Source of the DNA: Magallana gigas
Taxonomy: Eukaryota
Length of the DNA stretch: 64,000 bases
Assembly: GCF_963853765.1 (NCBI RefSeq)
Contig: NC_088858.1
Span: 50,654,001-50,718,000 of the forward strand
Reading direction: 5' to 3'
Positions 18,584 to 63,696 of this stretch are shown here, piece by piece. The notes below the pieces were generated by a model, which was not told where the DNA came from, made no database searches, and saw only the letters and a list, made by a program, of their open reading frames with translations. The first letter of the stretch is position 1; the number at the start of each line of letters is the position of its first letter. Both the position numbers and the translations under genes were made by a program.

Positions 18584-19045
18584 TTAAGCTCTTTTTACCT
18601 TGCCTAACCTGCTATGGCCAAGTCCTCTTCCGTACACCCCTTTTCTCGGCAGTCTGTTTTCAACAAGAACTTTTCCGTACCCTCCCCAATACAGATCGTT
18701 TCGAGGAAGAACACCATACAATTCGTTTCCATAGAGTCCACCATACAGAACATTCTTTCTATTTGTTCTTGTTTCAATCAGACCTTTTCCGTACGATCCT
18801 GTATACAGTTCGCTCCCAATAAGATCACCATACAATTCATTTCCATAGGGTCCACCATAGTGACCATAGAGACCATTCTTTTCATTTATTCTCTTTTCAA
18901 AAAGACCTTTTCCGTACCATCCTCCATACAGTTCGCTCCCAATAAGATCACCATACAATGTGTTTCTACCATAGAGACTGTTTGTTTTGTATCCATAGCA
19001 AAAGGCCACAGAAAAAAGGACCACAAAAAAGATCAGTCGGATCAT
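18584..19045 (-). CDS. Secreted Gly/Tyr-rich repeat protein, copy A (153 aa, shematrin-like composition)
   Basis: Hydrophobic N-terminus MIRLIFFVVLFSVAFCYG (signal-peptide-like); three LYGDLIGSELYGG-type repeats; basic tail RLGKVKRA; ATG directly after acceptor TTTTTGTTCTAG. Confidence 0.88.
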   Translation of the reverse strand: MIRLIFFVVLFSVAFCYGYKTNSLYGRNTLYGDLIGSELYGGWYGKGLFEKRINEKNGLYGHYGGPYGNELYGDLIGSELYTGSYGKGLIETRTNRKNVLYGGLYGNELYGVLPRNDLYWGGYGKVLVENRLPRKGVYGRGLGHSRLGKVKRA

Positions 19046-19161
19046 CTAGAACAAAAATATTGATTGATCTTATTTCAAAATAAGGACCATTTGATTCATC
19101 GAGTATTGTGAAAACAATAACATACGTCAATAATGAAATTTAAAATAAGCATTTGGCCTAC

Positions 19162-19232
19162 CTTGCTGATAAACAAAAAGGATTTGGTAAAGATCCTGTG
19201 TGCTTAAAGCTCAATGTGCAGGAGTATATATA
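19162..19232 (-). promoter_or_regulatory. TATA box (19225-19232) and short non-coding exon 1 (3' end 19162) of copy A
   Basis: TATATATA lies ~60 nt upstream of donor CAGCAAG|GTAGG; a 116-nt intron ends at the AG before the ATG. The same arrangement is conserved in B (TATA 32191-32198, donor 32127) and all C copies. Confidence 0.65.
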
Positions 19233-19531: not shown

Positions 19532-19534
<3 letters not shown>

Positions 19535-19620: not shown

Positions 19621-19624
<4 letters not shown>

Positions 19625-19919: not shown

Positions 19920-22594
19920 ATTACTTTAAATTCCAATTCGTTTAAGCTTATTTGTTTCAAATGTGATTTGGTAGATTTTCCAGAATGTTTTTAATAGCTT
20001 CTTATAAGTATTTTTTTGGCTTCCTTTTTCTAAAAAAAAAATCATTTGGGTAATATAAGGGACTGTTTCAAAAGCTTTGTAATAAATCAAATTGTATGAG
20101 ATAAGTAGAGCATCTACAATTGTGTGATTGTACATTTACTTTAAAAATATCCAACTCGTTGAAATGGTTATATTCGCTCGACAAGGCTCACGAATATATA
20201 CACTATTTCAACTCGCTGGATTTAGCAAATATAAAATCTCACTCTATAGATATCCTCTATATATTTGCAAAATGTAAACATAAGCATGTATACCATCATT
20301 GTTTATATACATGCAATAAGACTGGGATTATTGAAGAGGATAGATAAAGAAAGGGGGATGAGTAAATGGGCCTTGGGTAGAGGATGGGGTATATGGTTTT
20401 ATGTTAATGGTAAAAAACAACACGTTACAAAAAAAGTTATTGATTTGATACTTTTATGACTATCTTACAGTAAGAAACAATTATAATTTAGTACTGATAT
20501 GTTGCCAGTGTCTTCCATATTAATTATTTCCACAATGTTTTAGTAGTAAATATTTCTATTATTATTTTCTCTTGACAACAAAACTATGGGGGGGGGGGGG
20601 GCAGGAGTTTGCTAAATACAAGTTTCTTTCTTTCTTCTGTCATTTTGCAAAGTCGCCAGACGACTCGTTATCAATTCAATACCATTTCGAAGAAATCTCT
20701 GTCATGCATTTGAGTAAAAAATACAAATCATATTCCTTTGGTATAAAGGAGGTGCTACAACAGCTTCTATCAATAGCATTTCAGATGGTCAAATTAAAAA
20801 TCCGGGCGCTGGAAGTCAAGAGCTTATAAGTGCTTCGTAAATGTACCAACCTCAAAGTTAATTCATCATTGAAGTGTTGAAGTGTTCCCCTTTTTTCTTG
20901 CAGCTTACTTGATTATTTGTATGTTGTCTGTTCATAATATTGTGCACAGAAATGTTGAGTTGTTTATTTTGATTGTGTTTATGTATATTTATTATTTCAG
21001 AAGTTGTTGGATCTACAATTATTTGGTATGCATTTGGTTATGCTAGGATTAATGGGGGATCCAATCTTGAGTTTCTCCCATAAGATCTTACATAAGGTGG
21101 CAGGGAAAAGGCGGCATGAGATGGCCACATGTACCCCCCCCTAAATCAGGAAATTGTTACGGTATTGGTACGGCATTGTCTGATTCATCATTGTGCTATT
21201 TACAAACGGGGATTATTGATGCGCATGCGCAATTCCGTCAATGTTGATATTATGTAAACAGTCAAGTTAAAAATAGCATTGAACTAAGGAAGACACATGG
21301 CAACATACATAAACCATTTATTACCATAAATTATTTTAGTAAGCATCTAAATGAAAGTGTTCAGCTGTTGCCTTTAAGGCAGAAAACACTCCGTGTCCAT
21401 ATGGCACAATCTTTAGCTATACTGGAATAGGGTTATGTTTAGTGAGCATCTGGTCCTATGGCTCGCTACAACTCTCATTTCCGATTTGCTTCTTTGTTAA
21501 AATTAGATATGTTTCATTTTCCAGTATTGTTTTAACAGCTTTATATGTATATTTCAATGTTTCTGGTTTATTTGCATACGTTACGTGCATTTTCATTGAC
21601 GTATTTGCCATTTGGTTGCTATTATCCCTATGTATATGGGTCGGTAACCTTGCTTACAAATGTAACCAGTTAATAATTGTTTAAGAAAAAGCAAAATTCA
21701 ACTCAAATGAATCATTTCTGCGGAAAGAGTTTGAAAATTATATCATATTGTTGATAATTCAGTAAACCGATTAATTCCCTTGTACTGGCTCAGTGAATGA
21801 TTCCAAAAAGAAATATCCTTTTAATGCAACAAAATCATTTTTTTTTAAATTTCTCTGCCTTTCATGTTTTAATACATTTTGTTTGAATGTTTTGACATAT
21901 CAATTTCTGGGAAAATTATAACACTTTCTTCATATTAAATTAAAGCTAAATACCAAAGACAACACGTTTCATAAATCATGAAACTAAGTAAAGAAATAGA
22001 CTGATCAAACAAAGTCTGCGTTTTTCCCTTGCATGTTTTTTTTTATTTTGTGTGTCAATCATTCATACACAGTTTTAAAGTACAATGTACAGATGTAGTT
22101 TTCTGGGACGTCAAATGAGACTGGAATAAGTAATAGTAACTCTGCAAAGAAAAAAAAAGAAGATTTATTAATTTAAAAACGCATGTACCATCCTTAAATT
22201 TATTATAGAATAAATTAGCACGATATTAATTCTTGCACGAAATATAATGTTCAGTGATATTAAGGAACAGGTATACGGTATCAGTATTTTAATTCCATTG
22301 TTAAGAAATAATAGTGTTTCAGTTGGAGCATAAGCAAAACATTTATAAGCACATTAAAATTATTAATCGCAGTATTTCTTTCAAGAAAACTATATTATGT
22401 TAATGACTGCAAACTGATTCAATATGATCTTAACGGATAACAATGGAATCATCAAAATACCAAAAAAGTTACCTTTACAGAAGAAAAAAATGACGATCTG
22501 AAAGATGGAGGCAACGTATTTCATACATAACTCTTACATTGGCAGATTAATGTTTTGATCAGAAACTATATACAGTGTACCCATTATAGTCAAC
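19920..22594. repeat. Diverged unit spacer / 3' flank belonging to copy B (left part)
   Basis: Colinear with ~33500-36570 of the array unit apart from an internal ~450-bp absence; resumes at 31326 after the insertion. Confidence 0.8.
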
Positions 22595-22832
22595 TTGAAA
22601 GAATAGAATTCGTTTAATATCACATTTGGCCCCATAAATTTAATAAAAATGAAGTACACATTGAATCAAAACTATACATTGAAAATAAAAGCTGAACATA
22701 TGCTTCTTAAAAAAATAAGCAAAATTTATTGAATGCGTTACGTATGTGCTATTTTTTACAAGTCAAAGTATGCACGGAACGCGTATTTCCGGAAAAATCA
22801 ACAAAATTTAAAGACTTATAAGCATAATTGAA

Positions 22833-22935
22833 TAGGTCCGCATGATATCACCACTCTAAAACTTTTACACATGAGAGATCGTTATATAAGCTCTTTGCAT
22901 GCAAAAAATTACGATGGTGATATTGCGCGGACCTA
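22833..22935. mobile_element. ~100-bp TA-flanked MITE
   Basis: TAGGTCCGCATGATATCACCA ... TGGTGATATTGCGCGGACCTA: 21-bp inverted ends with 3 mismatches, TA at both termini. Confidence 0.75.
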
Positions 22936-23660
22936 GTTTTATTTTTAAATATGTTCATTTTTACGTCATGGAAATACACATGCATATGAATGTGTTGTTA
23001 TATAAACATTAAGTTTGTGCATTAAAGTCAAAATACTATACTCTTATTGTTAAGTATCGATGAATAAACCCAATGAATGAGAAAGTCATCACACTACTAA
23101 TATGAAGAGCGGGTCTGTTACGAATAACATGATATTTCACACGTCTTTCCTTGTATTAGCCATATCATTTTACTTCCGCGTTGCCGTATCTAAGCGACAG
23201 CGGACCAAGGTGCGTGTATTGTACAGGTAACGTTACGCACGACCAAGATCAATGAGACGAGACGGGTGAAGAATCAGTTTAGAAGAAGTGAAGGTAAATA
23301 AAATGTTTATCTTTATTTTAATATTATATTGAACATTACACACTGTATAATTTATTATAGTCATTCTCAAAGAGAAAAGTGGCACGATCACAATAGTCTC
23401 ATAGAAATAATTAATAGTATAACGTTATATATCAATACAAATCTGAAACATTATAGGGCTAACATGCTCATGTACATGTAATACGCACAGGAATTCAAGT
23501 ATTTTGCACTGTAGGCCAAAAATATTAATGCATTACATTCCTTTAATTATCAGATACTGGCCATATAGTCTTTATGTCTCGGTGAATATAGACGTCATTT
23601 TCCAAAAGTGACGTCACAATGCTTTTACATTATTTATTGACACTCGAGTCATATGATAAT

Positions 23661-23813
23661 NNNNNNNNNNNNNNNNNNNNNNNNNNNNNNNNNNNNNNNN
23701 NNNNNNNNNNNNNNNNNNNNNNNNNNNNNNNNNNNNNNNNNNNNNNNNNNNNNNNNNNNNNNNNNNNNNNNNNNNNNNNNNNNNNNNNNNNNNNNNNNNN
23801 NNNNNNNNNNNNN
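23661..23813. other. Assembly gap (153 N)
   Basis: Run of N. Confidence 1.
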
Positions 23814-24671
23814 GTAGTCTATATATAGCTGATTGCCATCAATTGTCCACCTCAAAAAAAAAAATCCATTAAATCACCCAAGTCCATGTAACGTGATTCA
23901 CTTTTTTCGGACACATATATTGGATCGAATAATACTTTTAGATAATTAATTATAAACGAAATAAGAATTTGGAAGTATAGTTTTCTATGTAGCGCAAGGA
24001 AACGATAAACAATAACGGTTGATGTACATGTAATCCAAAATAACTCCTGAGAAAGACAGGTGTGTGTAATAAAATATAACCTTACAAATGACAACATGAA
24101 GAAGTATACAATTTATCGGACTATGTGACATAATTATAAATACTTTATTACGAAGGTGATATTTTATTTTACTTTGTGAATTGGGTCATTCATTTTTATG
24201 CAGTTCATTTCGAATTTCGTACTTAATCTTTGTTTTGAAGATTTAAAAAGTCCTGCAAAAAATAAAAGTTACCGGTAAATACATGTAGTTTTAGATTTTA
24301 CATTTTCTTTGTTTTTTAATCTTTCATCAACTTTATTACCTTTATTGCCTGGTGGGTATTTTAACTAAGGAACATATTAGATATATCTTACAGCTTTAAT
24401 TTCCGCAGCACATATAAGATTTTATATCTCTGTTAGTCTAATTATTGTCATTTCGATACAATAATACTCAGAACGTACGATCCAAGTTGCACTCTGTCCA
24501 CTCTGTTGTTAAATTGCAGAACTTTAATTTTTTTATACAATTTGAGATTTTTGGCATTAATTCATTTAGAGGTATTCGTGAATTATAGACTTATTTTCAC
24601 AAAAAAGAAAACGATCACAATATTATCCATACAAAGTATTCTTCTTAAAAAGCAATATGAAGATAACGAAC

Positions 24672-24688
24672 AGAGAGAGAGAGAGAGG

Positions 24689-24726
<38 letters not shown>
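24672..24726. repeat. Interrupted (AG)n microsatellite
   Basis: Directly visible. Confidence 0.9.
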
Positions 24727-24727
<1 letters not shown>

Positions 24728-24772
24728 TTACATGTACATGTATATCACTTTCTGACTGTATTGTATTGGTAT

Positions 24773-24820
24773 CAGAGGCGGATCCAGCAATTTTGAAAAG
24801 GGGGGGGGGGGTTCCAATTG
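24773..24820. repeat. Fragment of a G-tract repeat beginning CAGAGGCGGATCCAGC
   Basis: GC-rich terminus followed by AAAAG(G)nTTCC; the AAAG(G)nTTCC motif recurs at 25441-25456. No matching other end seen. Confidence 0.35.
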
Positions 24821-25452
24821 ATGAAAATTAATACGTGCAAAATACATTATTTATCAATAAACAAAGCCTTTTGAACACTAAGAAACGAAAAATAATTCAG
24901 ACTTATTACGAAAAGCTATTATAAAAATGAATTTTTGGTAAAAAAAAAAAATATGTCTTTGATGTTTAAATTCTGAACGATTCTTGGAAACAAAACAAAA
25001 AAGGGCTTTCTTTTGTGTTTCATGTGGGTATGAAGGTACGGTATAGCTAGCATTCCAGAAAAATAGCCTAACTTGCATAAAATTAACTGTAATCGATTTT
25101 TTTAAAAAATAGAGTTGACAATACATTGTAGATGTTATTATAAATCTGTGTTTCTAGCGACACAGCTTAGTTAATTTTTTTTTAAAAATTCCACATGTTT
25201 ACTCATAGATGTGAGCACCGGATGCTGATGGGGAGTACCTTTTTCGATAAAAAAAATCGTTAGGGTTTTTCATATAAGAAATACATGTACATGTAAATTA
25301 CGGTGCGTTGTAAAAAAATCTTTCAATTAGCAATTTTAAAAGTATTTATTTGAAATAATTACAGTATTTATATTATAAATGGGGACAATTGCCTTTAAAT
25401 AGGCATTACAAGTTTTCAAAAAAATTTATATGTCCCAGATAAAGGGGGGGGG

Positions 25453-25456
<4 letters not shown>

Positions 25457-25526
<70 letters not shown>
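25457..25526. repeat. (GA)35 microsatellite
   Basis: Directly visible. Confidence 0.95.
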
Positions 25527-25528
<2 letters not shown>

Positions 25529-26465
25529 TTATCTTGTTTGCTATGATACAATATACCAATATACTGGTTTCAGTAAATGAAGAAAAAAATCAAAAATCAT
25601 TTTAAAGGCTGAACATTTTTACCGGGTGGGAAATCTCTGGTGCGGACAGGACTTAATTTTAAGAGGTGTGAAAGCCTCCGGGGCTGGAAGTCTACCCACA
25701 TATGCGGTCGTGAACGCTACTCATCACTATACACAGGAAGCAGATACTACACAAGATATAAATAATTGGTCAGAATTGGTCTTTGTTTGAATATCTTATT
25801 GTTCTAAAGACAACACGAAGCGATTTTATAAGGAAATGTTACGTGTCATCCGGATTTTCTTTAAGTGTGTAAAGCACAATTTAAAAAAAAATCAGTAAAC
25901 TACATATAATTCAGCTCCCAAAAATTTTACTCGGTACATTGTGTTTAGCATTTGACATTGTTTAATTCAACAAACATAATTGTGTAAGAAAACCATACGA
26001 TCAGTTAAAATGTTGAATGTAAAGGCAGCCATTATACGATGACAACTAATAGGTTCGTTCTCAATGGAGTGACGTTTTTGTGAAACAAGTTCCAATTGTC
26101 TGTATAACCAGTAAATACACCTTTAATAGCTCATAAGTTTGTTTTCAAAAGAAAATTGTATATGCATGATTTGGGCTGCACGCTCATTCATCTTCGTGGA
26201 ATTCATTTGGTCATAAACATTCACAATGATTCAAATATAAATTGCGTATTTTCAATTACTGAATAACAAAAATATTTTTCTCATTTATCCGACCTGTATA
26301 CAATTCACCTATTACGGAAAAAGAAAATAAATATGTTTGCCTATTAATTGAGGTGTCGCTTATAATTCAAGAGATGCTAAAATTAAATTGTGATGCATCA
26401 AAAATACTTGGGGTGTTTATGCCTCCCTGACTTTGGTCCGTAAACATTTGGGAGGATAGTTACAA

Positions 26466-26471
<6 letters not shown>

Positions 26472-26519
<48 letters not shown>
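26472..26519. repeat. (AG)24 microsatellite
   Basis: Directly visible. Confidence 0.95.
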
Positions 26520-26522
<3 letters not shown>

Positions 26523-27056
26523 TAAAACATCACTGGAGAAAAAATGTAGGTCCCATGATGGCATCCATTGTGTATTCCCCCCAATAACTGAACACATAGT
26601 GGAAAATAGCAATTTTCGAAAATAAAAATACAGTTACAGTAGAGCACATTTATAACGAACACAATTTTATCAGATCTCGTTTACGGCAAAATTATTTTCA
26701 TTCACTACATTTTTCAATCGTACAATGAACTCATTATTGATAGCAAATTGTGGTTTAAATCACTGTCACTGACACTCTTCGTTTTAGTTTAGTTTGTTTT
26801 ACTGCTGAAGGAAAACTAATGAACAAGAGAGTGCTAACTTTCGGGATAGAAATAAATATTGATGATATTTAAGAGTGTAGAAATGTCCTTAAATATACAG
26901 TGTGTCAGAATTTTCAAGACAGAAAATATGGGGAATTATAAATTAGGTTCACAATAAAATAAATTGCATAATTTTTTTATTTTTGTGGTAAATGTCGTGA
27001 ATAAAATTGCATATAACTGGCAATCGATGTAATAACGATTGTTCTCATTCAAACAG

Positions 27057-29325
27057 ATGCCAGGCACAGGAAAACGGGAATTCCCGTGTATTCTATGCAG
27101 GAAGCGAACAAAACCAACTGAGAGACGAACACTGACAGCAGAACTGAAACAATTGGTGCAGAAAATGTGTGTGTCCGATCCGTCTGATGAAGATGTACTT
27201 TGCACTGCATGTCGGATTAAATGCCATGTAAAGCTTAAGAAACACATAGAGAAAAAAGACACAGCGCCAAAGGATACGTTATTTTCACCACAACAACAAG
27301 GAAGCTCCTCCAGATACGCCAGGAGTCCACCCTCTGTCACCCTTCCGCTACCTTCGTCCGCCACCAGCCATGCCCGTTGTTTCATTTGCAAACGACCCGG
27401 ACCCAAACTAATTGTTGTGCCAACTAGTGAGAGAAACTCTGTTTTTCTGCATCAGAAAATCCTTATTCCATACGGTTCAAGGTGCTGTAGTAAACATATT
27501 CCGGATGGCAGGTTTACCTCAGATGCTCTGAAACAGATTCCCGTTTTCTCACAAACATCAAGCTTAAACAGGAGCTCCATCGTCGACATTTTACTGTATT
27601 TGCGAGAAACTGCTTTGAGATATGATACATCTCGAATTGATTTTGACCGAGAAAATGCTTTCAGTGATCAACAGTACACAACTCTTACCGGTCTTAGCAA
27701 GAATTCCTTTAACGACCTGTTGTCTTATATCAGCGACAGTGTTAAGAATACATCTGTACGCAGCGCTAGGAATAGCCTGGGGATTTTTCTTGTGAAGATG
27801 AAGTCCGGCCTTTGCAACAGTATCCTGTCAACCATTTTCAACGTCTCCAAAGCAAGCATCCGTCGGGCTATTCATACAGTGCGGAGGGCATTAATGGAAA
27901 ACTTTGTTCCCCAGAACCTTGGTTTTCAACACATATCAAGAGAAAGTATTATTCAACATCATACACGACCATTAGCTGAATCATTGTTTGGTGGAACCGG
28001 AAGTCAAGCCCTACTAGTGCTGGATGGTACCTATATATACATTCAAAAGAGCTCCAACTTCACTTTCCAAAGAAAATCCTACAGTTTGCATAAAGGCCGA
28101 CCACTCGTAAAGCCGATGGTGATTGTATCTACAAGCGGTTATTACATCTCTGTAATTGGACCCTATCTCGCAAGAAACAACGATGCAGCCATCCTTCAGC
28201 ACATCATGAAATCAAACAGGGAGGATGTATTGAAGTGGGTTGAGGAAGACGATATCTTCATTATTGATAGGGGTTTCAGGGATTCTGTTGCATACCTGGA
28301 AGAACTTGGCATTCAGGCTATCATGCCAGCTTTCATGAAAAAGGGGGAGAAGCAGGTGTCTACTCCAGATGCAAATACAAGTCGACTTGTAACAAAGGTA
28401 TACTGAGATTGATGCAATAACTATGAAAACCAATTTACAGTCATATCTTAAGTACATGTACTAATACGTTTCCTACTTATTTTTAGATTCGATGGGTTGT
28501 TGAATCGGCAAACGCTAGAATAAAACGATGGAAACTGCTTGACTGTATTCTACCCACTAGCCAAATACCATTTATTGGTGACTACGTCAAAATTGTTTGT
28601 AGCATATCAAACAAATACTACTCACCACTTTCTTCGGGTTCGTATATGTAATACATACATAAGATTTTAAAAGATTGCATGATAGATATTTTTAATCACT
28701 GAAATAAATATCAAACGTTTATTAATACATGTATTAATGATATTAATAACTTCATGCAGGTGACAGAGATGCCGATATGGCTGTTGCAGCCAAAATGCAG
28801 TTCCTTGCGAAACAAGTGAACCACCTTAAGGAGGAAGTCGAAGCCAGGAAACTGCACTCACGAGTAGCCATGTGGAGAAATCCTGAAGATCTCGATTCCT
28901 TGGGCTTCCCACATTTGGATGAAGATGATATTCGCAACATAACGTGTGGAGTGTATCAGCTTAAACTTGCTAGCAGTTATGCGGCGGAACATTTTCAAGA
29001 TGGAAGCAATATCTTGATACACAAAGAGGACCCGAATCTGCTGAGAATCAAAATTCAGAGTAGACATGTCTCTGCGAAATCATATCTGCTTTGGATTCGT
29101 TTTGATGAATCAAGTATAACGGGTTGGTACTGTCAGTGCAAAGCTGGGGCCCGAGTGGTAGGGGTTTGTGCGCACGTCGCGGCAGTTATTTGGTATATAG
29201 GACTCCGTAACTACAAAGGATCGTTTAAATCTGTCCAAGACTGGGGACGATTCGTTGATGACGCTTCAGTTTTGCCGGAACCAGTAGACGAGTCTGAGTC
29301 AGACGAAGATCTAGTTGAAGAGTAA
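27057..29325 (+). CDS. Spliced DDE_Tnp_4-type (Harbinger/ISL2EU-like) transposase with N-terminal Cys/His zinc motifs and C-terminal SWIM finger; exons 27057-28397, 28487-28637, 28760-29325 (685 aa)
   Basis: Joins ACAAAG|gtatac..ttttag|ATT and TCGG|gttcgt..atgcag|GT give an uninterrupted frame [28 protein letters not shown]. Catalytic motifs [15 protein letters not shown] and WVVESAN; HTH-like [24 protein letters not shown]; [21 protein letters not shown]. Confidence 0.9.
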
Positions 29326-31595: not shown

Positions 31596-32009
31596 TCAGC
31601 CGTACACCCTTTTTCTCGGCAGTCTGTTTTCAACCAGAACTTTTCCGTACCCTCCCAAAAACAGATCGTTTCGAGGAAGAACACCATACAATTCCTTTCC
31701 ATAGAGTCCACCATACAGAACATTCTTTCTATTTGTTCCTGTTTCAATCACACCTTTTCCGTACGATCCTCTATACAGTTCGCTCCCAATAAGATCACCA
31801 TACAATTCCTTTCCATAGGGTCCACCATATAGAACATTCTTTTCATTTATTCTTGTTCCAATCAGACCTTTTCCGTACAATCTACCATACAGTTCGCCGC
31901 TCCCAATGAGATCACCATACAATGTGTTTCTACCATAGAGACTGTTTGTTTTGTATCCATAGCAAAAGGCCACAGAAAAAAGGACCACAAAAAAGATCAG
32001 TCGGATCAT
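31596..32009 (-). pseudogene. Gly/Tyr-rich gene copy B with in-frame premature TGA (137 aa; ancestral stop TAG at 31542-31544)
   Basis: Reads ..GTG TAC GGC TGA CTT TAC GGA AAA GGA.. and continues in frame as LYGKGLGHNRLGKVKTA*, homologous to the tails of the other copies. Confidence 0.75.
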
Positions 32010-53126: not shown

Positions 53127-56100
53127 CTAGAACAGAAATATTGATTGATCTTATTTCAAAATAAGGACCATTTGATTCATTTGGTATTAAGAAAAAATTA
53201 ACATACGTCAATAATGAAATTTAAAATAAAGCAATTTGGCCTACCTTGCTGATAAACAAAAAGGACTTGGTATAAGATACTGTGTGCTTATGGCTCAATG
53301 TGCAGGGGTATATATACTAACAGTCACGTAAAAGACAACCAAATATCATCAATAAAAACAGTCGTAATAACCACAATGTGACACAACTCCAACGAACATT
53401 AAACATTGAAAGAAATAATTCATCACAGTAGGCCATAGTAAAAAAAAAAAACAATACTAATTTATAAATTTGAAAAATTAGACAGGGTCATCGAGATTAC
53501 GGAGCAAAAAATAGTCATTAAGGTAATTGTTTTATTCTACATATTGTGGTCCTCGTTTGTCCCTAATTGACAATCATGATTTAATGTACTATTTCTTGGT
53601 ATCATTATCATTATAATTTTTCCAGTTTGAGTTCGATTTATGCATGTCATTAGTTGGTATTTAAATCAATGTTAAAGCTCATAAAAACATAGATTAGTTA
53701 TTAAATTTCTAATTTCACTATTTTTATAAGCTCAATATAGTAGAGAATAATGACATAAACAAAAATTATGCGTAATAAAGACTATACACATATATGGATA
53801 TACAAATTTAATTCATACGTGTGGTTATACTACTCGTGTGAGAAACCTTTGCTTTATCACACGGGCGATGCTTCATCAATACTTCCGGTCCGAACTAATT
53901 TTGACATAGCCCTCGCTGAAACGCTTCAGCGACCTATTTTCGAAAATTTGCTTGTACTTTCAACATAATTATATCTACTACCAAAAATTAAAATATAATG
54001 GATTTTGTCAAAGATTTAAATTACAAATATGAAAGAAAACACATAACTGTTAGGCATAAGCGTCCGGAACCGGAGGAGGGGGTGGGGGGGGGGGAGATTA
54101 GGGGGAGGTTATACATAACCGTAACCAAAGACTTTTCGTTTTTTGCTTGTCGAAACTTTTGATAAGTTTAGCCCACCACCCCCTTTCAATTTGCTTCCAG
54201 CGCCACTATGTGGTTTTTAAAACTCCTAATCACTTAATCTATCAAGGAGTACATCCTGACGACGCGATGAAAACAGAACGTTTTGGTTGTGTTTATATAC
54301 AAGAATGCACAGAAAATAAAGTTTTTAAAGACTTTTATTCCACCACCAATAAGCATCCTAACTCAATATTTTCCATTTTAAATCATTAAGCTACAATTTG
54401 TTTTATAAATCATCAACAGCTGTTCCTCGTTCGAGTCAATTCAAACTAACGAGCATTCGCAACTTTCTGAATGTCAACAAACTTGATTCTTCGAGTCGTC
54501 TGATCAGTATTTCAATTAAATCAAGTGATTATGCTCTAAGAAATATTATTAAGAGCTTAAAATATTTTTCAAGGTTTATTTTAGTTTGACTTTACATTTA
54601 AACAGATAGATTGATCTTCGAAATGACGTTCTAAATTGCATTGCGCATGGACATAGTAACTGCTTAACAAAGGTCAAATGTATGAGATAAATAGAACATC
54701 TATATTGTGTGATTTATTTTACATTTGCTTTAAAATTATCCAACTAGTTGAAATGGTTATATTTGTTCTGCAAGACTTGCGAATATATACACCATTTCAA
54801 CTTGCTGGATAAAGCAAATATAAAATCTCAAAATATAGATATCCTCTATATATTTGCAAAAATGTAAACATAAGCATGTATACCATCATTGTTTATATAC
54901 ATGCAATGAGACTGGGATTATTGAAGAGGATAGATAGAGAAAGGGGGTGAGAAAATGGGCCTTGGATAGAGGTTTGGGTATATGGATTTATTTTTATGGT
55001 AAAAAAAAAAACACTGGACAAAGAAAGATTTCGAAATGATACTTTTATGACTTTCTTATAGTAAGAAACAATTATAATTTAGTACTGATATGTTGCCAGT
55101 GTCTTCCATATTAATAATTACCACAGTGTTTTAGTAATAAATATTTCTATTATTGTTTTCTCTAGACAACGAAACTATAGGGGGTAATCTGGTGTTTGCT
55201 AAATACAAGTTTCTTTCTTTCTTCTGTCATTTTACAAAGTCGCCAGACGACTCGTTACCAATTCAATATCATTTCGAAGAAATCTCTGTCATGCATTGGA
55301 GTAAAAAATACAAATCATATTCCTTTGGTATAAAGGAGGTGCTACAACAGCTTCTATCAATAGCATTTCAGATGGTCAAATTAAAGAACCTGGGCGCTGG
55401 AAGTCAAGAGCTTATAAGTGCTTAGTAAATGTACCAACCTCAAAGTCAATCTATTATTGAAATGTTAAAGTGTGTACCTTTTTTCTTGCAGCTTACTTGA
55501 TTTTTTGTATGTTGTCTGATCATAATGGTGTGCACAGAAATGTTGACTTGTTTATTTTGATTGTGTTTATATATATTTATTCTTTCAGAAGGTGTTGGAT
55601 CTTCAATTATTTGGCATGCATTCGGTTATGCTAGGATGAATGGGGGATCCAATCTTGAGTTTCTCCCATAGAAGCTATCATAAAGTTGCAGGGAAAAGAC
55701 GGCATGTGATGGCGACATGTCCTCTCCTAAATCAGGCAATTGTTACGGTATTGGTACGGCATTGTCTGGTTTATCATTGTGAAGGTAATGACATTGGTAA
55801 GATAAAATGTTTTGAATTGTGCGAAATAATGGAGAAATCTTTGAATGCTCTTTCTTGAATGTTGCCAAGAACGAAAATCATGTGGTCACACATACTGCCA
55901 AAACCAACATGGCGTAAGACTAGAAACAATAATGCTCTCAATAAGACAAGAGTGTGAGTTAAAAACTTTGGTGCTACAGGAATCTTGGAACACCATGGAG
56001 GCTATGTTCGCTGTCTAAAGATAGCTTCATCTGACCAAAGCTTATTTAGGGCCTATGGTTGCATTAGAAAGAAAATAAAATTGTCCTAGCCTTATAACTA

Positions 56101-57929
56101 AGAAAAGTTTTATGTCGTCAGGTGTACGAGTTAACCCTTTGGCTTAGGGTAATGACCATGGCACACACTTTATTCTTAGCCAAATACCAATCATTAACTA
56201 AACATTCTAAATTCTTAGACTATGATTTTCTAAAACATTTTAGTATTCATCTTAATGATAGTGTTCAGCTGTTGTCTTTAAGGCGGCAAACACTTCGTGT
56301 CCATATGGCACAATCTTTAGCTAAACTTGAATAGGGTTATATTTAGTGAGCATCTGGTCCTATGGCTCGCTGCAACTCTTATCTTCAATTTGCTTCTTTG
56401 TTAAAATTAGATATGTTTGATTCTCCAGTATCGGTTTAACAGCTTTGTATGTATACTTCAATATTTCTGGTTTATTTGCATACTTCAAGTGCATTTCCAT
56501 TTACATGTATTTGCCATTTGGTTGCTATTATCCTTTTTTACATGGGTCGGTAACCTTGCTTACAAATACAAATGTAACCAGTCAATGATTGTTAAAGAAA
56601 AAGCAAAATGTAACTCAAATGAATCATCTCTGCGTAAAGAATTTGAAAATTATATCATATTGTTGATAATTCAGTAAATCGATCAATGCTCCTGAGTTGC
56701 ATAGTGAATGATTCCAAATAGAAATATCCTTTCAATGCAACGAAATCAATATTTTTTAAATTTTCGTGCCTTTCATCTTTTAATACATTTTGTTTGAATG
56801 TTTTGACATATCAATTCCCGGGAAAACTATAACACGGTCTTCAAATTAAATACAGGTTAAATACCACAAACAACACGTGTGATAAATCTCAATACTAAGC
56901 AACGAAATAGACTGATAAAACAAAGTCTGAGTTTTTCCCTTCCATGATTTATTTGGTGTGTTAATCATTCAAAGACAGTTATAAAGTACAATGTACAGAT
57001 GTAGTTTCCTGGGACGTCAAATGAGATTGGAACCATTAATAGTAACCCTGTAAAAAAGGAGATTTATTAAAGTAAAATGCATGCACCATCCTTAAATTTA
57101 TTATAGAATACATTGGCACGATATCAGTTCTTGCACGATATAGGATGTTCAGTAATATTAAGGTACATGTATACACTATATTATTTTCATTTCGTTGACT
57201 AGAAATAATAGTGCTTTGGTTGGAACATAAGCAAATCAGTTATAAGCACATTAAAATTATTTATCACAGTATTTCTTTTTCCAGAAAATTATAATATATC
57301 AATGATTGCAAACTGGTCTAATATGATCTTAACGGATAACAATGTAATTATCAAAATGCCAAAAAAGTAACCTTTACAGAAGAAAAAAGCTGGACAGTTC
57401 ATAATTAATTGATTAACAATTGAAGCATTTTGATTGCAGATTATTCTCAACAAAACGGTATTATATATTCTAAAAACATAAAAATATTTTTTAAGATTAG
57501 AAATATTCCACAGCGTCAGAAGTTTTGATTTTAAAAGAGCATTTATGTGGTATATAATGTCTTGTGATCCTCATACTTTTAAAATATGACGGTCTGAAAG
57601 ATGGAGGCAACGTATTTCATACATAACTCTTACATTGGCAGGTTACATGTTTTGATCAGAAACTATATACAGTTTACCCAATATAGTAAACAAAGCTAAA
57701 TCATCGTATACTCTTAAAAGAAAAAAAATTGAAGAGGATTGTAAAGATTGTAACATTTTGAAAATCATAATTTTCAAATCTTTTTCTCTACCACAAGTTA
57801 AAAATAAAAAAAAAAGTCGTTGTCTATAAATCAGCTGGGCCCTCACACCTTGATTTTAAATATATCAATCAAAAAGATTTTCAATGAAAAAGAAATAAAT
57901 ACCGGTATGAGTATCGGATAATTTTCTTA

Positions 57930-58409
57930 TTAGAATTTTTTACTAAGCTTTTTTTTTTTTACCTCGCCTAGCCTGCTATGGCCAAGTCCTCTTCCGTACA
58001 CCCCTTTTCTTGGCAGTCTGTTTTCAACCAGAACTTTTCCGTACCCTCCCAAAAACAGATCGTTTCGAGGAAGATCGCCGTACAATTGCTTTCCATAGAG
58101 TCCACCATACAGAACATTCTTTCTATTTGTTCTCGTTTCAATCAGACCTTTTCCGTACGATCCTCCATACAGTTCGCTCCCAATAAGATCACCATACAAT
58201 TCATTTCCATAGGGTCCACCATAGTGACCATAGAGACCATTCCTTTTATTTGTTCTTATTTCAATCAGACCTTTTCCGTACGATCCTCCATACAGTTCGC
58301 TCCCAATAAGATCACCATACAATGTGTTTCTACCATAGAGACTGTTTGTTTTGTATCCATAGCAAAAGGCCACAGAAAAAAGGACCACAAAAAAGATCAG
58401 TCGGATCAT
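57930..58409 (-). CDS. Gly/Tyr-rich secreted protein, copy C5 (159 aa)
   Basis: Protein identical to C4; A12 run. Confidence 0.85.
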   Translation of the reverse strand: MIRLIFFVVLFSVAFCYGYKTNSLYGRNTLYGDLIGSELYGGSYGKGLIEIRTNKRNGLYGHYGGPYGNELYGDLIGSELYGGSYGKGLIETRTNRKNVLYGGLYGKQLYGDLPRNDLFLGGYGKVLVENRLPRKGVYGRGLGHSRLGEVKKKKLSKKF

Positions 58410-61400
58410 CTAGAACAGAAATATTGATTGATCTTATTTCAAAATAAGGACCATTTGATTCATTTGGTATTAAGAAAAAATTAACATACGTCAATAATGA
58501 AATTTAAAATAAAGCAATTTGGCCTACCTTGCTGATAAACAAAAAGGACTTGGTATAAGATACTGTGTGCTTATGGCTCAATGTGCAGGGGTATATATAC
58601 TAACAGTCACGTAAAAGACAACCAAATATCATCAATAAAAACAGTCGTAATAACCACAATGTGACACAACTCCAACGAACATTAAACATTGAAAGAAATA
58701 ATTCATCACAGTAGGCCATAGTAAAAAAAAAAAACAATACTAATTTATAAATTTGAAAAATTAGACAGGGTCATCGAGATTACGGAGCAAAAAATAGTCA
58801 TTAAGGTAATTGTTTTATTCTACATATTGTGGTCCTCGTTTGTCCCTAATTGACAATCATGATTTAATGTACTATTTCTTGGTATCATTATCATTATAAT
58901 TTTTCCAGTTTGAGTTCGATTTATGCATGTCATTAGTTGGTATTTAAATCAATGTTAAAGCTCATAAAAACATAGATTAGTTATTAAATTTCTAATTTCA
59001 CTATTTTTATAAGCTCAATATAGTAGAGAATAATTACATAAACAAAAATTATGCGTAATAAAGACTATACACATATATAGATATACAAATTTAATTCATA
59101 CGTGTGGTTATACTACTCGTGTGAGAAACCTTTGCTTTATCACACGGGCGATGCTTCATCAATACTTCCGGTCCGAACTAATTTTGACATAGCCCTCGCT
59201 GAAACGCTTCAGCGACCTATTTTCGAAAATTTGCTTGTACTTTCAACATAATTATATCTACTACCAAAAATTAAAATATAATGGATTTTGTCAAAGATTT
59301 AAATTACAAATATGAAAGAAAACACATAACTGTTAGGCATAAGCGTCAGAACCGGAACCGGAGGAGGGGGTGGGGGGGGGGGAGATTAGGGGGAGGTTAT
59401 ACATAACCGTAACCAAAGACTTTTCGTTTTTTGCTTGTCGAAACTTTTGATAAGTTTAGCCCACCACCCCCTTTCAATTTGCTTCCAGCGCCACTATGTG
59501 GTTTTTAAAACTCCTAATCACTTAATCTATCAAGGAGTACATCCTGACGACGCGATGAAAACAGAACGTTTTGGTTGTGTTTATATACAAGAATGCACAG
59601 AAAATAAAGTTTTTAAAGACTTTTATTCCACCACCAATAAGCATCCTAACTCAATATTTTCCATTTTAAATCATTAAGCTACAATTTGTTTTATAAATCA
59701 TCAACAGCTGTTCCTCGTTCGAGTCAATTCAAACTAACGAGCATTCGCAACTTTCTGAATGTCAACAAACTTGATTCTTCGAGTCGTCTGATCAGTATTT
59801 CAATTAAATCAAGTGATTATGCTCTAAGAAATATTATTAAGAGCTTAAAATATTTTTCAAGGTTTATTTTAGTTTGACTTTACATTTAAACAGATAGATT
59901 GATCTTCGAAATGACGTTCTAAATTGCATTGCGCATGGACATAGTAACTGCTTAACAAAGGTCAAATGTATGAGATAAATAGAACATCTATATTGTGTGA
60001 TTTATTTTACATTTGCTTTAAAATTATCCAACTAGTTGAAATGGTTATATTTGTTCTGCAAGACTTGCGAATATATACACCATTTCAACTTGCTGGATAA
60101 AGCAAATATAAAATCTCAAAATATAGATATCCTCTATATATTTGCAAAAATGTAAACATAAGCATGTATACCATCATTGTTTATATACATGCAATGAGAC
60201 TGGGATTATTGAAGAGGATAGATAGAGAAAGGGGGTGAGAAAATGGGCCTTGGATAGAGGTTTGGGTATATGGATTTATTTTTATGGTAAAAAAAAAAAC
60301 ACTGGACAAAGAAAGATTTCGAAATGATACTTTTATGACTTTCTTATAGTAAGAAACAATTATAATTTAGTACTGATATGTTGCCAGTGTCTTCCATATT
60401 AATAATTACCACAGTGTTTTAGTAATAAATATTTCTATTATTGTTTTCTCTAGACAACGAAACTATAGGGGGTAATCTGGTGTTTGCTAAATACAAGTTT
60501 CTTTCTTTCTTCTGTCATTTTACAAAGTCGCCAGACGACTCGTTACCAATTCAATATCATTTCGAAGAAATCTCTGTCATGCATTGGAGTAAAAAATACA
60601 AATCATATTCCTTTGGTATAAAGGAGGTGCTACAACAGCTTCTATCAATAGCATTTCAGATGGTCAAATTAAAGAACCTGGGCGCTGGAAGTCAAGAGCT
60701 TATAAGTGCTTAGTAAATGTACCAACCTCAAAGTCAATCTATTATTGAAATGTTAAAGTGTGTACCTTTTTTCTTGCAGCTTACTTGATTTTTTGTATGT
60801 TGTCTGATCATAATGGTGTGCACAGAAATGTTGACTTGTTTATTTTGATTGTGTTTATATATATTTATTCTTTCAGAAGGTGTTGGATCTTCAATTATTT
60901 GGCATGCATTCGGTTATGCTAGGATGAATGGGGGATCCAATCTTGAGTTTCTCCCATAGAAGCTATCATAAAGTTGCAGGGAAAAGACGGCATGTGATGG
61001 CGACATGTCCTCTCCTAAATCAGGCAATTGTTACGGTATTGGTACGGCATTGTCTGGTTTATCATTGTGAAGGTAATGACATTGGTAAGATAAAATGTTT
61101 TGAATTGTGCGAAATAATGGAGAAATCTTTGAATGCTCTTTCTTGAATGTTGCCAAGAACGAAAATCATGTGGTCACACATACTGCCAAAACCAACATGG
61201 CGTAAGACTAGAAACAATAATGCTCTCAATAAGACAAGAGTGTGAGTTAAAAACTTTGGTGCTACAGGAATCTTGGAACACCATGGAGGCTATGTTCGCT
61301 GTCTAAAGATAGCTTCATCTGACCAAAGCTTATTTAGGGCCTATGGTTGCATTAGAAAGAAAATAAAATTGTCCTAGCCTTATAACTAAGAAAAGTTTTA

Positions 61401-63216
61401 TGTCGTCAGGTGTACGAGTTAACCCTTTGGCTTAGGGTAATGACCATGGCACACACTTTATTCTTAGCCAAATACCAATCATTAACTAAACATTCTAAAT
61501 TCTTAGACTATGATTTTCTAAAACATTTTAGTATTCATCTTAATGATAGTGTTCAGCTGTTGTCTTTAAGGCGGCAAACACTTCGTGTCCATATGGCACA
61601 ATCTTTAGCTAAACTTGAATAGGGTTATATTTAGTGAGCATCTGGTCCTATGGCTCGCTGCAACTCTTATCTTCAATTTGCTTCTTTGTTAAAATTAGAT
61701 ATGTTTGATTCTCCAGTATCGGTTTAACAGCTTTGTATGTATACTTCAATATTTCTGGTTTATTTGCATACTTCAAGTGCATTTCCATTTACATGTATTT
61801 GCCATTTGGTTGCTATTATCCTTTTTTACATGGGTCGGTAACCTTGCTTACAAATACAAATGTAACCAGTCAATGATTGTTAAAGAAAAAGCAAAATGTA
61901 ACTCAAATGAATCATCTCTGCGTAAAGAATTTGAAAATTATATCATATTGTTGATAATTCAGTAAATCGATCAATGCTCCTGAGTTGCATAGTGAATGAT
62001 TCCAAATAGAAATATCCTTTCAATGCAACGAAATCAATATTTTTTAAATTTTCGTGCCTTTCATCTTTTAATACATTTTGTTTGAATGTTTTGACATATC
62101 AATTCCCGGGAAAACTATAACACGGTCTTCAAATTAAATACAGGTTAAATACCACAAACAACACGTGTGATAAATCTCAATACTAAGCAACGAAATAGAC
62201 TGATAAAACAAAGTCTGAGTTTTTCCCTTCCATGATTTATTTGGTGTGTTAATCATTCAAAGACAGTTATAAAGTACAATGTACAGATGTAGTTTCCTGG
62301 GACGTCAAATGAGATTGGAACCATTAATAGTAACCCTGTAAAAAAGGAGATTTATTAAAGTAAAATGCATGCACCATCCTTAAATTTATTATAGAATACA
62401 TTGGCACGATATCAGTTCTTGCACGATATAGGATGTTCAGTAATATTAAGGTACATGTATACACTATATTATTTTCATTTCGTTGACTAGAAATAATAGT
62501 GCTTTGGTTGGAACATAAGCAAATCAGTTATAAGCACATTAAAATTATTTATCACAGTATTTCTTTTTCCAGAAAATTATAATATATCAATGATTGCAAA
62601 CTGGTCTAATATGATCTTAACGGATAACAATGTAATTATCAAAATGCCAAAAAAGTAACCTTTACAGAAGAAAAAAGCTGGACAGTTCATAATTAATTGA
62701 TTAACAATTGAAGCATTTTGATTGCAGATTATTCTCAACAAAACGGTATTATATATTCTAAAAACATAAAAATATTTTTTAAGATTAGAAATATTCCACA
62801 GCGTCAGAAGTTTTGATTTTAAAAGAGCATTTATGTGGTATATAATGTCTTGTGATCCTCATACTTTTAAAATATGACGGTCTGAAAGATGGAGGCAACG
62901 TATTTCATACATAACTCTTACATTGGCAGGTTACATGTTTTGATCAGAAACTATATACAGTTTACCCAATATAGTAAACAAAGCTAAATCATCGTATACT
63001 CTTAAAAGAAAAAAATTGAAGAGGATTGTAAAGATTGTAACATTTTGAAAATCATAATTTTCAAATCTTTTTCTCTACCACAAGTTAAAAATAAAAAAAA
63101 AAGTCGTTGTCTATAAATCAGCTGGGCCCTCACACCTTGATTTTAAATATATCAATCAAAAAGATTTTCAATGAAAAAGAAATAAATACCGGTATGAGTA
63201 TCGGATAATTTTCTTA

Positions 63217-63696
63217 TTAGAATTTTTTACTAAGCTTTTTTTTTTTTACCTCGCCTAGCCTGCTATGGCCAAGTCCTCTTCCGTACACCCCTTTTCTTGG
63301 CAGTCTGTTTTCAACCAGAACTTTTCCGTACCCTCCCAAAAACAGATCGTTTCGAGGAAGATCGCCGTACAATTGCTTTCCATAGAGTCCACCATACAGA
63401 ACATTCTTTCTATTTGTTCTCGTTTCAATCAGACCTTTTCCGTACGATCCTCCATACAGTTCGCTCCCAATAAGATCACCATACAATTCATTTCCATAGG
63501 GTCCACCATAGTGACCATAGAGACCATTCCTTTTATTTGTTCTTATTTCAATCAGACCTTTTCCGTACGATCCTCCATACAGTTCGCTCCCAATAAGATC
63601 ACCATACAATGTGTTTCTACCATAGAGACTGTTTGTTTTGTATCCATAGCAAAAGGCCACAGAAAAAAGGACCACAAAAAAGATCAGTCGGATCAT
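63217..63696 (-). CDS. Gly/Tyr-rich secreted protein, copy C6 (159 aa)
   Basis: Protein identical to C4; A12 run. Confidence 0.85.
   Translation of the reverse strand: MIRLIFFVVLFSVAFCYGYKTNSLYGRNTLYGDLIGSELYGGSYGKGLIEIRTNKRNGLYGHYGGPYGNELYGDLIGSELYGGSYGKGLIETRTNRKNVLYGGLYGKQLYGDLPRNDLFLGGYGKVLVENRLPRKGVYGRGLGHSRLGEVKKKKLSKKF

What the first reader, a model, noticed from the sequence alone, without database searches (positions are those of the whole stretch)
18584..63696. Eight-member family of secreted YG/LYG-repeat proteins: candidate undescribed shell or adhesive matrix protein family
Seen in C2: a signal-peptide-like N-terminus, 31 Gly and 17 Tyr in 154 aa, with 16 of the 17 Tyr followed by Gly and LYG nine times. 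There is no Cys in the mature part and the tail is Lys/Arg-rich. Established: Gly/Tyr-rich secreted proteins with basic tails (shematrins, KRMPs) form molluscan shell frameworks, and Tyr can be oxidised to DOPA or quinone for cross-linking. Inference: this is a lineage-specific structural protein under dosage amplification. The LYGDLIGSELYGGSYGKGLIE repeat is not one I recognise from named proteins.
Basis: partly seen in the sequence, partly recalled or inferred. Interest (0 to 1): 0.82.

Follow-up and report, generated by a model that had tools for sequence, protein, structure and literature searches.

The report
Oyster-only secreted Gly/Tyr repeat gene array
A tandem array of near-identical oyster genes encodes a small secreted protein built from a 38-residue Gly/Tyr/Leu-rich repeat; it is transcribed at an enormous level in some samples, has no relatives outside Crassostrea gigas/angulata, and is probably a building block of a secreted material, though which one is unknown.

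Summary
But the ORF is not the whole gene. RNA contigs show a 3-exon gene:
- a short 5'UTR exon;
- a 118-nt intron ending at the TAG just before the ATG;
- one 447-nt coding exon;
- a ~911-nt intron;
- a mini-exon encoding GYY-stop.

The "Lys-rich tail" is read-through into intron 2. The true product has 152 aa and is identical to RefSeq "uncharacterized protein" LOC128175150/LOC128175117 of C. angulata.

Copy 2 is a pseudogene. The N gap lies inside an 8.7-kb insertion in its intron, so it is in no reading frame.

The whole genome holds ten members, all in one 85-kb cluster:
- a 385-aa, nine-repeat paralog;
- copy 1;
- the pseudogene;
- seven copies that are about 98.7-99.96% identical, one of them beyond the window.

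One RNA data set covers the exons at about 4×10^5 summed depth against 13-70 in the intron. Another poly(A) run has no reads on the gene.

Exhaustive searches find no homologues outside oysters. Flanking GYGG-type genes share the exon plan and the GYY mini-exon.

A structural-matrix role is plausible but untested. The scan has noted other Gly/Tyr clusters elsewhere in this genome, but not this family.

The parts
41085..42751 (-). Reference array gene, the RNA-verified copy. TATA 42744-42751. Exon 1 (5'UTR) about 42720-42680. Intron 1 42562-42679 (118 nt). Exon 2 42115-42561 (ATG at 42561, 149 codons). Intron 2 41204-42114 (911 nt). Exon 3 from 41203 (GYY, stop at 41192-41194). AATAAA at 41104-41109.
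   Evidence: Splice joints 42561/42680 (run X25, depth 4010) and 41202/42114 (X26), both CT..AC on the plus strand, which is GT..AG on the minus strand. Exon depth reaches 4.1e5 against 13-70 in intron 2. Sequence and translation. The product is identical to RefSeq XP_052696487.1.
35804..37470 (-). Array copy (ATG 37280). Exon 2 36834-37280, exon 3 from 35922. Two substitutions in the product (G26D, Y63F). This is the most diverged array unit.
   Evidence: It shows 63-71 mismatches per 5.2 kb against the other units.
46366..48032 (-). Array copy (ATG 47842). Exon 2 47396-47842, exon 3 from 46484. Product identical to the reference copy.
   Evidence: Two mismatches per 5.2 kb against unit 42561.
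51647..53316 (-). Array copy (ATG 53126). Exon 2 52680-53126, intron 2 of 914 nt, exon 3 from 51765. Identical product.
56929..58599 (-). Array copy (ATG 58409). Exon 2 57963-58409, intron 2 of 915 nt, exon 3 from 57047. Identical product.
62217..63886 (-). Array copy (ATG 63696). Exon 2 63250-63696, intron 2 of 914 nt, exon 3 from 62335. Identical product.
17572..19232 (-). Copy 1, the diverged intact paralog. TATA 19225-19232. Intron 1 19046-19161. Exon 2 18599-19045. Intron 2 17688-18598. Exon 3 from 17687. Product ends ...RLGKGYY.
   Evidence: Exon 2 is 95.1% identical to the array copy with no indels; intron 2 is 90% and the 5' flank 85% identical; dN/dS 0.58. It is the counterpart of C. 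gigas LOC117688817.
31557..32198 (-). Pseudogene copy 2, 5' part: promoter, exon 1, intron 1 and exon 2 (31557-32009) with an in-frame TGA at 31596-31598.
22595..31324 (.). 8.7-kb insertion that splits intron 2 of pseudogene copy 2. It holds the assembly gap and a PIF/Harbinger-like transposase ORF (27039-28406, plus strand).
   Evidence: Homology to the unit stops at unit position 41847 (window 22594) and resumes at 41884 (window 31325). Pfam DDE_Tnp_4 at 1.3e-8.
23661..23813 (.). Assembly gap (153 N). It lies inside the insertion above, not inside any exon of the family.
21934..22594 (-). Pseudogene copy 2, 3' remnant: decayed exon 3 (AGT TAC TAT TAC, so the stop is lost) at about 22136, plus the first part of intron 2.
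13655..14426 (-). Old, degenerate fragment of a unit (exon 3 / intron 2 region, 74-76% identity).

Best explanation
These are real, expressed, three-exon genes of a family found only in Crassostrea (Magallana) gigas/angulata.

The product:
- It has 152 aa. After a predicted signal peptide (cleavage near residue 16-18) the mature protein is about 15 kDa, basic (pI about 9.5) and free of Cys.
- It consists of three copies of a 38-41-residue repeat. The repeat has conserved Tyr-Gly and Leu positions and a conserved Gly-Lys...Glu.Arg segment. The protein ends in Gly-Tyr-Tyr.

Proposed function:
- I propose that it is a secreted building block of an extracellular material. The most likely material is the insoluble organic framework of the shell or its periostracum, made by mantle epithelium.
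- The regularly spaced Tyr and Leu would act as stickers for self-association (condensation or beta-sheet formation).
- The Tyr-Gly-Lys sites would offer substrates for tyrosinase/quinone cross-linking and possibly for chitin binding, as shown for the Gly/Tyr region of KRMP-3.
- The seven near-identical tandem copies would supply the very high mRNA dose.

Shown here: the gene structure, splicing, very high and conditional transcription, copy number, restriction to one locus and to these oysters, and the composition.
Inferred: secretion, the tissue, self-assembly, cross-linking and the structural role.
For: - Splice joints and an exon/intron depth ratio of about 10^4 show a mature mRNA. Summed depth reaches about 4e5 in X25, whereas poly(A) run X39 has no read on the gene.
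- The spliced product equals a RefSeq model.
- The N-terminus has a charged start, a 12-residue hydrophobic core and small residues at -1/-3.
- Mature composition: Gly 23%, Leu 15%, Tyr 13%, no Cys, pI 9.5.
- Exon 2 is better conserved than the introns and flanks, and has no indels.
- The 38-residue repeat is shared with a nine-repeat paralog. Tyr, Gly and Leu columns are invariant or nearly so.
- Seven units are about 98.7-99.96% identical.
- The cluster is embedded among same-strand GYGG-type secreted Gly/Tyr genes that share its exon plan and the GYY-stop mini-exon.
- Language-model features are nearest to arthropod cuticle proteins, as a lead only.
- Literature: Gly/Tyr-rich shematrins and KRMPs are among the most highly expressed mantle genes. 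The KRMP-3 Gly/Tyr region binds chitin, with quinone tanning proposed (PMC4498902, PMC4660305).
- The genome carries many tyrosinase genes.
Against: - No tissue, stage or proteomic evidence could be obtained. Run identities are coded and no paper names these genes.
- There is no sequence homology to any shell, adhesive or cuticle protein.
- Gly content (23%) is lower than in typical shematrin-type proteins, and the repeat is complex rather than low-complexity.
- dN/dS of 0.58 indicates only moderate constraint.
- The short protein is predicted disordered (pLDDT 39). The beta-repeat model of the long paralog (pTM 0.71) has no structural match and may be the known tendency of AlphaFold to build solenoids from perfect repeats.
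- No tyrosinase gene lies near the cluster; the nearest on this chromosome is about 7 Mb away.
Confidence: 0.5

Rival explanations
1. It is a secreted material protein, but of a non-shell secretion. Candidates are larval or spat cement, mucus or a glandular coating, an egg coat, or a clot or wound-sealing matrix. It would work by the same Tyr/Leu-driven condensation.
For: The same sequence features as the main explanation apply. Expression is strongly sample-dependent (4e5 in X25, zero in X39), which fits any specialised gland or stage. Tyr-Gly-Lys motifs resemble adhesive chemistry (general knowledge). Squid beak and sucker-ring proteins show that GxY/GGLY-type motifs can build non-mineral materials (PMC11931252).
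Against: Nothing distinguishes it from the shell reading. The neighbouring GYGG-type genes look most like shell-framework proteins, but they are also uncharacterised.
Confidence: 0.25
2. It is a polyprotein precursor that is cut at basic sites into many small peptides (neuropeptide-like, antimicrobial or signalling), some of them C-terminally amidated at Gly-Lys or Gly-Arg.
For: It has a signal peptide followed by repeats. Every repeat ends in a basic residue: KR or RK in the short forms and GK in the long paralog. A Gly-Lys in mid-repeat is nearly invariant. Tandem gene clusters of Gly/Tyr-rich peptide precursors are known in nematodes (from memory).
Against: The dibasic sites are not conserved between the short and long paralogs, and single-Lys cleavage is unusual in molluscs. 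The conserved columns are the periodic Tyr, Gly and Leu rather than discrete peptide cores. The motifs are absent from two C. gigas neuropeptide catalogues. An mRNA level of this size and a nine-repeat paralog fit a material better than a signal.
Confidence: 0.12
3. It is a very young orphan gene array with no settled function, or an array inflated by the assembly.
For: It is restricted to two sister taxa. Constraint is only moderate. One copy is already a pseudogene. RefSeq for C. angulata lists only two identical array genes.
Against: The frame, splice sites, promoter and repeat are conserved between copy 1, the array and the 65%-identical long paralog. Transcription and correct splicing are massive. 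The units carry distinct variants with a neighbour-to-neighbour gradient, which argues against simple assembly duplication.
Confidence: 0.06

Closest known systems
Shematrins (Pinctada prismatic-layer framework proteins)
   Same: Both are secreted, basic and Gly/Tyr(/Leu)-rich repetitive proteins that end in Tyr, form multi-gene families and evolve fast within a lineage. Shematrins are among the most abundant mantle transcripts and prismatic-layer proteins (PMC4660305, PMC4498902).
   Different: No sequence homology was found. Here Gly is only 23% and is arranged in a complex 38-residue repeat rather than XGnX runs. There is no RKKKY-type basic C-terminus (that motif is recalled from Yano 2006 and was not checked); the apparent Lys tail is intronic. 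Presence in shell is not shown.
KRMP family and Prismalin-14 (Gly/Tyr-rich chitin-binding regions)
   Same: Small, secreted and basic (pI about 9.5-9.8), with a Tyr/Gly-rich region. That region was shown to bind chitin in KRMP-3 and is proposed to be quinone-tanned (PMC4498902).
   Different: There is no separate Lys-rich domain and no homology. Chitin binding was not tested.
Cephalopod suckerins (M2 modules GYG/GGY/GGLY/GLGGY) and squid beak HBPs (GHGLY repeats)
   Same: LYG/GLYGG-type motifs, with Tyr and Leu as stickers between Gly. In the cephalopod proteins these drive coacervation and beta-sheet networks without mineral (PMC11931252).
   Different: There are no Ala/His-rich M1 modules and no His-rich pentapeptides. 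It comes from a different molluscan class, has no homology, and its behaviour is untested.
Neighbouring oyster GYGG-type genes (e.g. UniProt K1Q081, uncharacterised)
   Same: They lie in the same chromosomal cluster on the same strand. They share the exon plan: an acceptor AG 0-3 nt before the ATG, one large coding exon ending G-K|GT, and (in three of the four) a mini-exon encoding GYY-stop. They also have a signal peptide and are Gly/Tyr-rich.
   Different: There is no significant protein or DNA similarity (BLASTP E = 8.6). The neighbours are classic low-complexity GYGG proteins (Gly 29-37%), not 38-residue repeats. Their splice sites are predicted only.

Membership tests
Shematrin | Detectable sequence similarity to Pinctada shematrins | tested here: not met
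   A profile search of 1.84e9 representatives and two word-indexed searches returned only oyster self-hits and junk repeats.
Shematrin | Gly-rich XGnX repeats (very high Gly content) | tested here: not met
   Gly is 23% of the mature protein. The repeat is a 38-41-residue unit with conserved Tyr, Gly, Leu, Lys, Glu and Arg columns.
Shematrin | Basic C-terminal motif ending in Tyr (RKKKY-type; recalled from memory) | tested here: not met
   The spliced C-terminus is GE-GYY or GK-GYY. The Lys run is intron sequence.
Shematrin | Mantle-edge expression and presence in the prismatic layer | not testable with these tools
   Run metadata are coded and no proteome data are available.
KRMP | Lys-rich basic domain followed by a Gly/Tyr-rich domain | tested here: not met
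   There is no Lys-rich domain. Lys is 6% and dispersed.
Suckerin | Alternating Ala/His-rich M1 and Gly/Tyr-rich M2 modules | tested here: not met
   The mature protein has no Ala and only two His. Only M2-like LYG/GLYGG motifs are present (PMC11931252).
Neuropeptide or peptide polyprotein precursor | Repeated peptide cores flanked by conserved dibasic or Gly-basic processing sites | tested here: inconclusive
   A basic residue ends every repeat, but it is dibasic only in the short forms. Conservation follows the Tyr/Gly/Leu periodicity. The motifs are absent from two oyster neuropeptide surveys.
Oyster GYGG-type 'GYY-terminal' cluster genes (unnamed) | Shared three-exon plan with a terminal GYY-stop mini-exon | tested here: met
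   The plan is RNA-verified for the LYG array. It is predicted in phase for three of the four neighbours.
Oyster GYGG-type 'GYY-terminal' cluster genes (unnamed) | Sequence similarity | tested here: not met
   BLASTP E = 8.6. blastn found only a 27-nt match at E = 0.004.
Ribosomal_S6e (Pfam hit of the long paralog) | A single domain match over the family's cut-off | tested here: not met
   The whole-protein score is 39 bits, but no individual stretch passes. It is the sum of weak hits to each repeat.

The most novel reading that the evidence does not exclude
The 38-residue LYG repeat defines a new class of self-assembling molluscan material protein found only in these oysters. It would be a major component (several per cent of the mRNA) of one specialised secretory tissue. 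It would build a tanned or beta-sheet network in the way suckerins or shematrins do, but would have evolved independently, with dose set by a very young tandem array whose copy number may vary between oysters.
Probability: 0.35. Interest if true: 0.6.

Novelty: new variant of a known kind. Interest (0 to 1): 0.45.

Why it matters
If the protein proves to be a main component of an oyster secretion, it adds an independently evolved sequence design to the small set of Tyr/Gly-based marine structural proteins (shematrins, KRMPs, suckerins, beak proteins). That design is a complex 38-residue repeat with regularly spaced Tyr-Gly and Leu.

It also gives a clean example of how dose is raised by very recent tandem amplification. 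It further shows that the flanking GYGG genes and this family share a gene skeleton while their repeats have diverged beyond recognition. This bears on how lineage-specific matrix proteins arise.

On the practical side, the corrected gene model (C-terminus GYY, not a Lys tail) is what proteomic searches should use.

Tried and rejected
- Literature: searches for the peptides, the RefSeq LOC and XP identifiers, UniProt K1Q081 and the mis-assigned PEX13 name together with Crassostrea found no paper. Broader searches on oyster Gly/Tyr-rich, periostracum, shematrin-like and shell-field proteins gave background only. McDougall et al. 2013 on shematrin/KRMP gene structure is not held.
- Pfam: nothing for the short protein. 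The Ribosomal_S6e hit of the long paralog is repeat-summed noise.
- Profile search hits: P0004 and P0007 look like translated CRISPR-type repeats, and P0005 and P0006 are unrelated repeat junk.
- Variant proteins: P0002 (two repeats) and P0003 (a one-repeat form of the long paralog) come from short-read contigs. They may be real repeat-number variants or collapsed assemblies, so I do not count them as evidence of polymorphism.
- Fold searches: the long-paralog model gave no match (TM 0.1-0.2; the weak rows are beta-helices) in PDB or the AlphaFold clusters. The short protein folds as disorder.
- Transcriptome contigs: an exact look-up of the spliced product found only the C. angulata genome.
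- RNA genes: no Rfam family or tRNA in the window.
- Antisense ORF: the 149-aa ORF over each coding exon is rejected as a gene. GT..AG polarity fixes transcription to the minus strand.
- Tyrosinase linkage: none is near the cluster.
- Complex prediction was not used. Self-binding of a disordered low-complexity chain would not be informative.
Full report
**What is there.** The window is G000:C6:50654001-50718000 of a 564-Mb, 29-contig genome. Runs labelled "oyster metagenome" hold the sequence. The closest annotated proteins are from Crassostrea gigas and C. angulata. Eight ORFs with the same N-terminus lie on the minus strand at the reported places. The Tyr-Gly excess is far beyond what the composition gives: 0 of 20,000 shuffles reach it.

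**The real gene.** I laid four runs on 39000-43500.
- In X25 the coding region reaches a summed depth of 3-4×10^5, while the stretch between 41265 and 42019 has 13-70.
- A joint 42561/42680 (X25, depth 4010) and a joint 41202/42114 (X26) both read CT..AC on the plus strand. That is GT..AG on the minus strand.
- The gene therefore has three exons:
  - a short 5'UTR exon downstream of a TATATATA box (42744-42751);
  - a 118-nt intron whose acceptor is the TAG just before the ATG, which explains why every ORF starts right after a stop;
  - a 447-nt exon 2 (42115-42561);
  - a 911-nt intron that starts GTAAAAAAAAAA;
  - an exon 3 that adds Gly-Tyr-Tyr-stop and about 90 nt of 3'UTR with AATAAA.
- The KKKA and KKKKLSKKF tails of the ORFs are translations of that intron. 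Their two forms differ only by the length of the A run.
- The spliced 152-aa product is identical to RefSeq XP_052696487.1/XP_052696537.1, "uncharacterized protein LOC128175150/LOC128175117" of C. angulata.
- All six distal copies splice in silico to the same structure, and so does the ninth copy beyond the window.
- Poly(A) run X39 (11 million records read) has no read on the gene, so expression is conditional.
- X25 is only guessed to be RNA by the tool. The splice joints and the 10^4-fold exon/intron ratio show that it is.

**The gap and the second copy.** The N run 23661-23813 is the only one in the window.
- Homology to the repeat unit runs up to window 22594 (unit position 41847). It resumes at 31325 (unit position 41884).
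- The 8.7 kb in between holds the gap and a PIF/Harbinger-type transposase ORF.
- Copy 2 is therefore one gene whose intron 2 was split by an insertion.
- It also has an in-frame TGA at 31596-31598. Its exon 3 remnant near 22136 has lost both the Gly codon and the stop.
- It is a pseudogene, and the gap touches no reading frame.

**Extent and age of the family.** A six-frame search of the whole genome, with the protein and with a profile of the repeat, finds matches only at C6:50,637,9xx-50,722,979.
- The members are a 385-aa paralog with nine 38-residue repeats, copy 1, the pseudogene, and seven array copies at a 5281-5288-bp period.
- Array units differ by 2-18 mismatches per 5.2 kb, with neighbours most alike. 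The unit at 37280 differs from the others by 63-71 mismatches.
- This pattern fits very recent duplication or homogenisation rather than an assembly duplicate.
- Copy 1 against the array: exon 2 is 95.1% identical with no indel, intron 2 is 90% with 40 gap columns, and the 5' flank is 85%. dN/dS is 0.58. Selection on the coding frame is therefore real but moderate.
- The long paralog keeps the promoter, exon 1, intron 1 and the donor GGCAAG|GT. A likely last exon gives ...GK-TTY-stop, which is predicted only.

**Relatives elsewhere.**
- The word-indexed search of 5.8×10^9 proteins gave only P0001, whose 90%-identity cluster holds the RefSeq models of both oysters, and a 112-aa variant.
- The long paralog gave nothing.
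- An exhaustive HMMER search of 1.84×10^9 representatives with the repeat profile gave those two, plus a 65-aa one-repeat form of the long paralog. The remaining hits are unrelated repeats.
- No C. virginica, Pinctada, Mytilus or other mollusc protein appears.
- Pfam finds nothing real.
- No paper in the library holds the peptides or the identifiers. One C. angulata isoform is auto-named PEX13, which is a composition artefact.

**The protein.**
- Mature form: about 134 aa and 14.8 kDa, pI 9.5, Gly 23%, Leu 15%, Tyr 13%, no Cys, no Ala, no Met.
- The repeat consensus is NGLYGGxYGxEVYGDxLGKDLYGGLxGKGLIExRTNxK. Asn1, a Tyr-Gly pair, a Leu and a Gly are invariant. Further Tyr, Gly, Leu, Lys, Glu and Arg columns are nearly invariant.
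- AlphaFold without an alignment gives the nine-repeat paralog an all-beta repeat with four strands per unit (pTM 0.71, pLDDT 70-86).
- That model matches no known fold, and the three-repeat protein is predicted disordered (pLDDT 39). I treat beta-structure as a possibility only.
- Language-model features are nearest to arthropod cuticle proteins (0.85; a lead only).

**Neighbourhood.** Within 50 kb on either side, outside the window, four same-strand genes encode secreted GYGG-type proteins with Gly 29-37% and Tyr 10-14%.
- All four have an AG acceptor 0-3 nt before the ATG and one large coding exon ending G-K(-x-x)|GT.
- Three of the four have, in phase, a downstream AG|GGN TAY TAY stop.
- A match to that mini-exon pattern is not expected by chance in four 1.5-kb stretches (my estimate is about 2×10^-4).
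- There is no significant sequence similarity to the LYG family.
- I read this as a common gene skeleton whose repeat region has been replaced or has diverged beyond recognition.
- One neighbour corresponds to UniProt K1Q081, which is uncharacterised.

**How it most likely works.** A signal peptide, a basic Cys-free Tyr/Gly/Leu repeat, extreme and conditional mRNA levels, tandem dose amplification and Gly/Tyr-rich neighbours together point to a secreted material protein.
- By analogy with Pinctada, the shell organic framework or the periostracum is the most likely destination. There, shematrins and KRMPs are among the most abundant mantle transcripts. The KRMP-3 Gly/Tyr region binds chitin, and quinone tanning is proposed for it (PMC4498902, PMC4660305).
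- Tyr-Tyr contacts as drivers of condensation are documented for squid beak GHGLY peptides and suckerin GGLY modules (PMC11931252).
- All of this is inference. The tissue is unknown.
- The main rivals are a non-shell secretion and a peptide polyprotein. The latter is suggested by the basic residue ending each repeat. It is weakened because those sites are dibasic only in the short forms, and because the motifs are absent from oyster neuropeptide surveys.

**Novelty and earlier notes.**
- The genes are already modelled in RefSeq as uncharacterised. The family itself is undescribed and has no homologues.
- In kind it resembles the fast-evolving Gly/Tyr-rich matrix proteins of bivalves, so I rate it a new variant of a known kind.
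- Earlier notes of this scan report other Gly/Tyr-rich clusters on other chromosomes of this genome, which one of them calls the Pacific oyster. One of those clusters is said to include shell-field markers. I did not test those claims, and they concern different genes.

Noticed in passing
window 4248-8348 (-): Ty3/gypsy-type LTR retrotransposon with an uninterrupted 1366-aa gag-pol ORF (zinc knuckle, aspartic protease, RT, RNase H, integrase).
   Followed up: partly
window 116-1246 (-): 376-aa ORF with a DDE_3 (Tc1/mariner-type) transposase domain.
   Followed up: partly
window 27039-28406 (+): 455-aa PIF/Harbinger-like transposase ORF (DDE_Tnp_4) inside the 8.7-kb insertion that splits the pseudogene's intron.
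   Followed up: partly
G000:C6:50602048-50602830, 50740035-50740619, 50753885-50754457, 50763826-50764359 (all minus strand; loci L026, L032, L033, L034): Four secreted GYGG-type Gly/Tyr-rich genes flank the cluster. They share its exon plan, and three of the four also have the GYY-stop mini-exon. One corresponds to UniProt K1Q081 (uncharacterised).
   Followed up: partly
window 43228-43500, and the same place in each unit: A stretch of the intergenic spacer is covered in three RNA runs, including poly(A) run X39. The reads are 90-99% alike and mostly run on into unlike sequence. It is probably a dispersed, transcribed repeat element.
   Followed up: no
window 41118 (X25 contig): One X25 contig continues for 255 nt beyond exon 3 into sequence that is absent from the window. 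It could be a chimeric contig, an alternative 3' exon or an allele; this is unresolved.
   Followed up: partly
window 42130-42579 (+), and the same place in each copy: A 149-aa antisense ORF overlaps every coding exon. It is a by-product of the periodic codon composition, not a gene, since splice polarity fixes the minus strand.
   Followed up: yes
L010 676-1830 (-), long paralog: Pfam Ribosomal_S6e scores 39 bits (cut-off 26) although no single stretch passes. This false positive is produced by nine repeats that each weakly resemble one S6e segment.
   Followed up: yes
RefSeq XP_052701658.1 (P0010): A C. angulata member of this family is auto-named 'probable peroxisomal membrane protein PEX13 isoform X2'. 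This is a composition-driven mis-annotation.
   Followed up: partly
window 13655-14426: Degenerate remnant (74-76% identity) of the exon 3 / intron 2 part of a unit, showing that the locus had older copies.
   Followed up: partly
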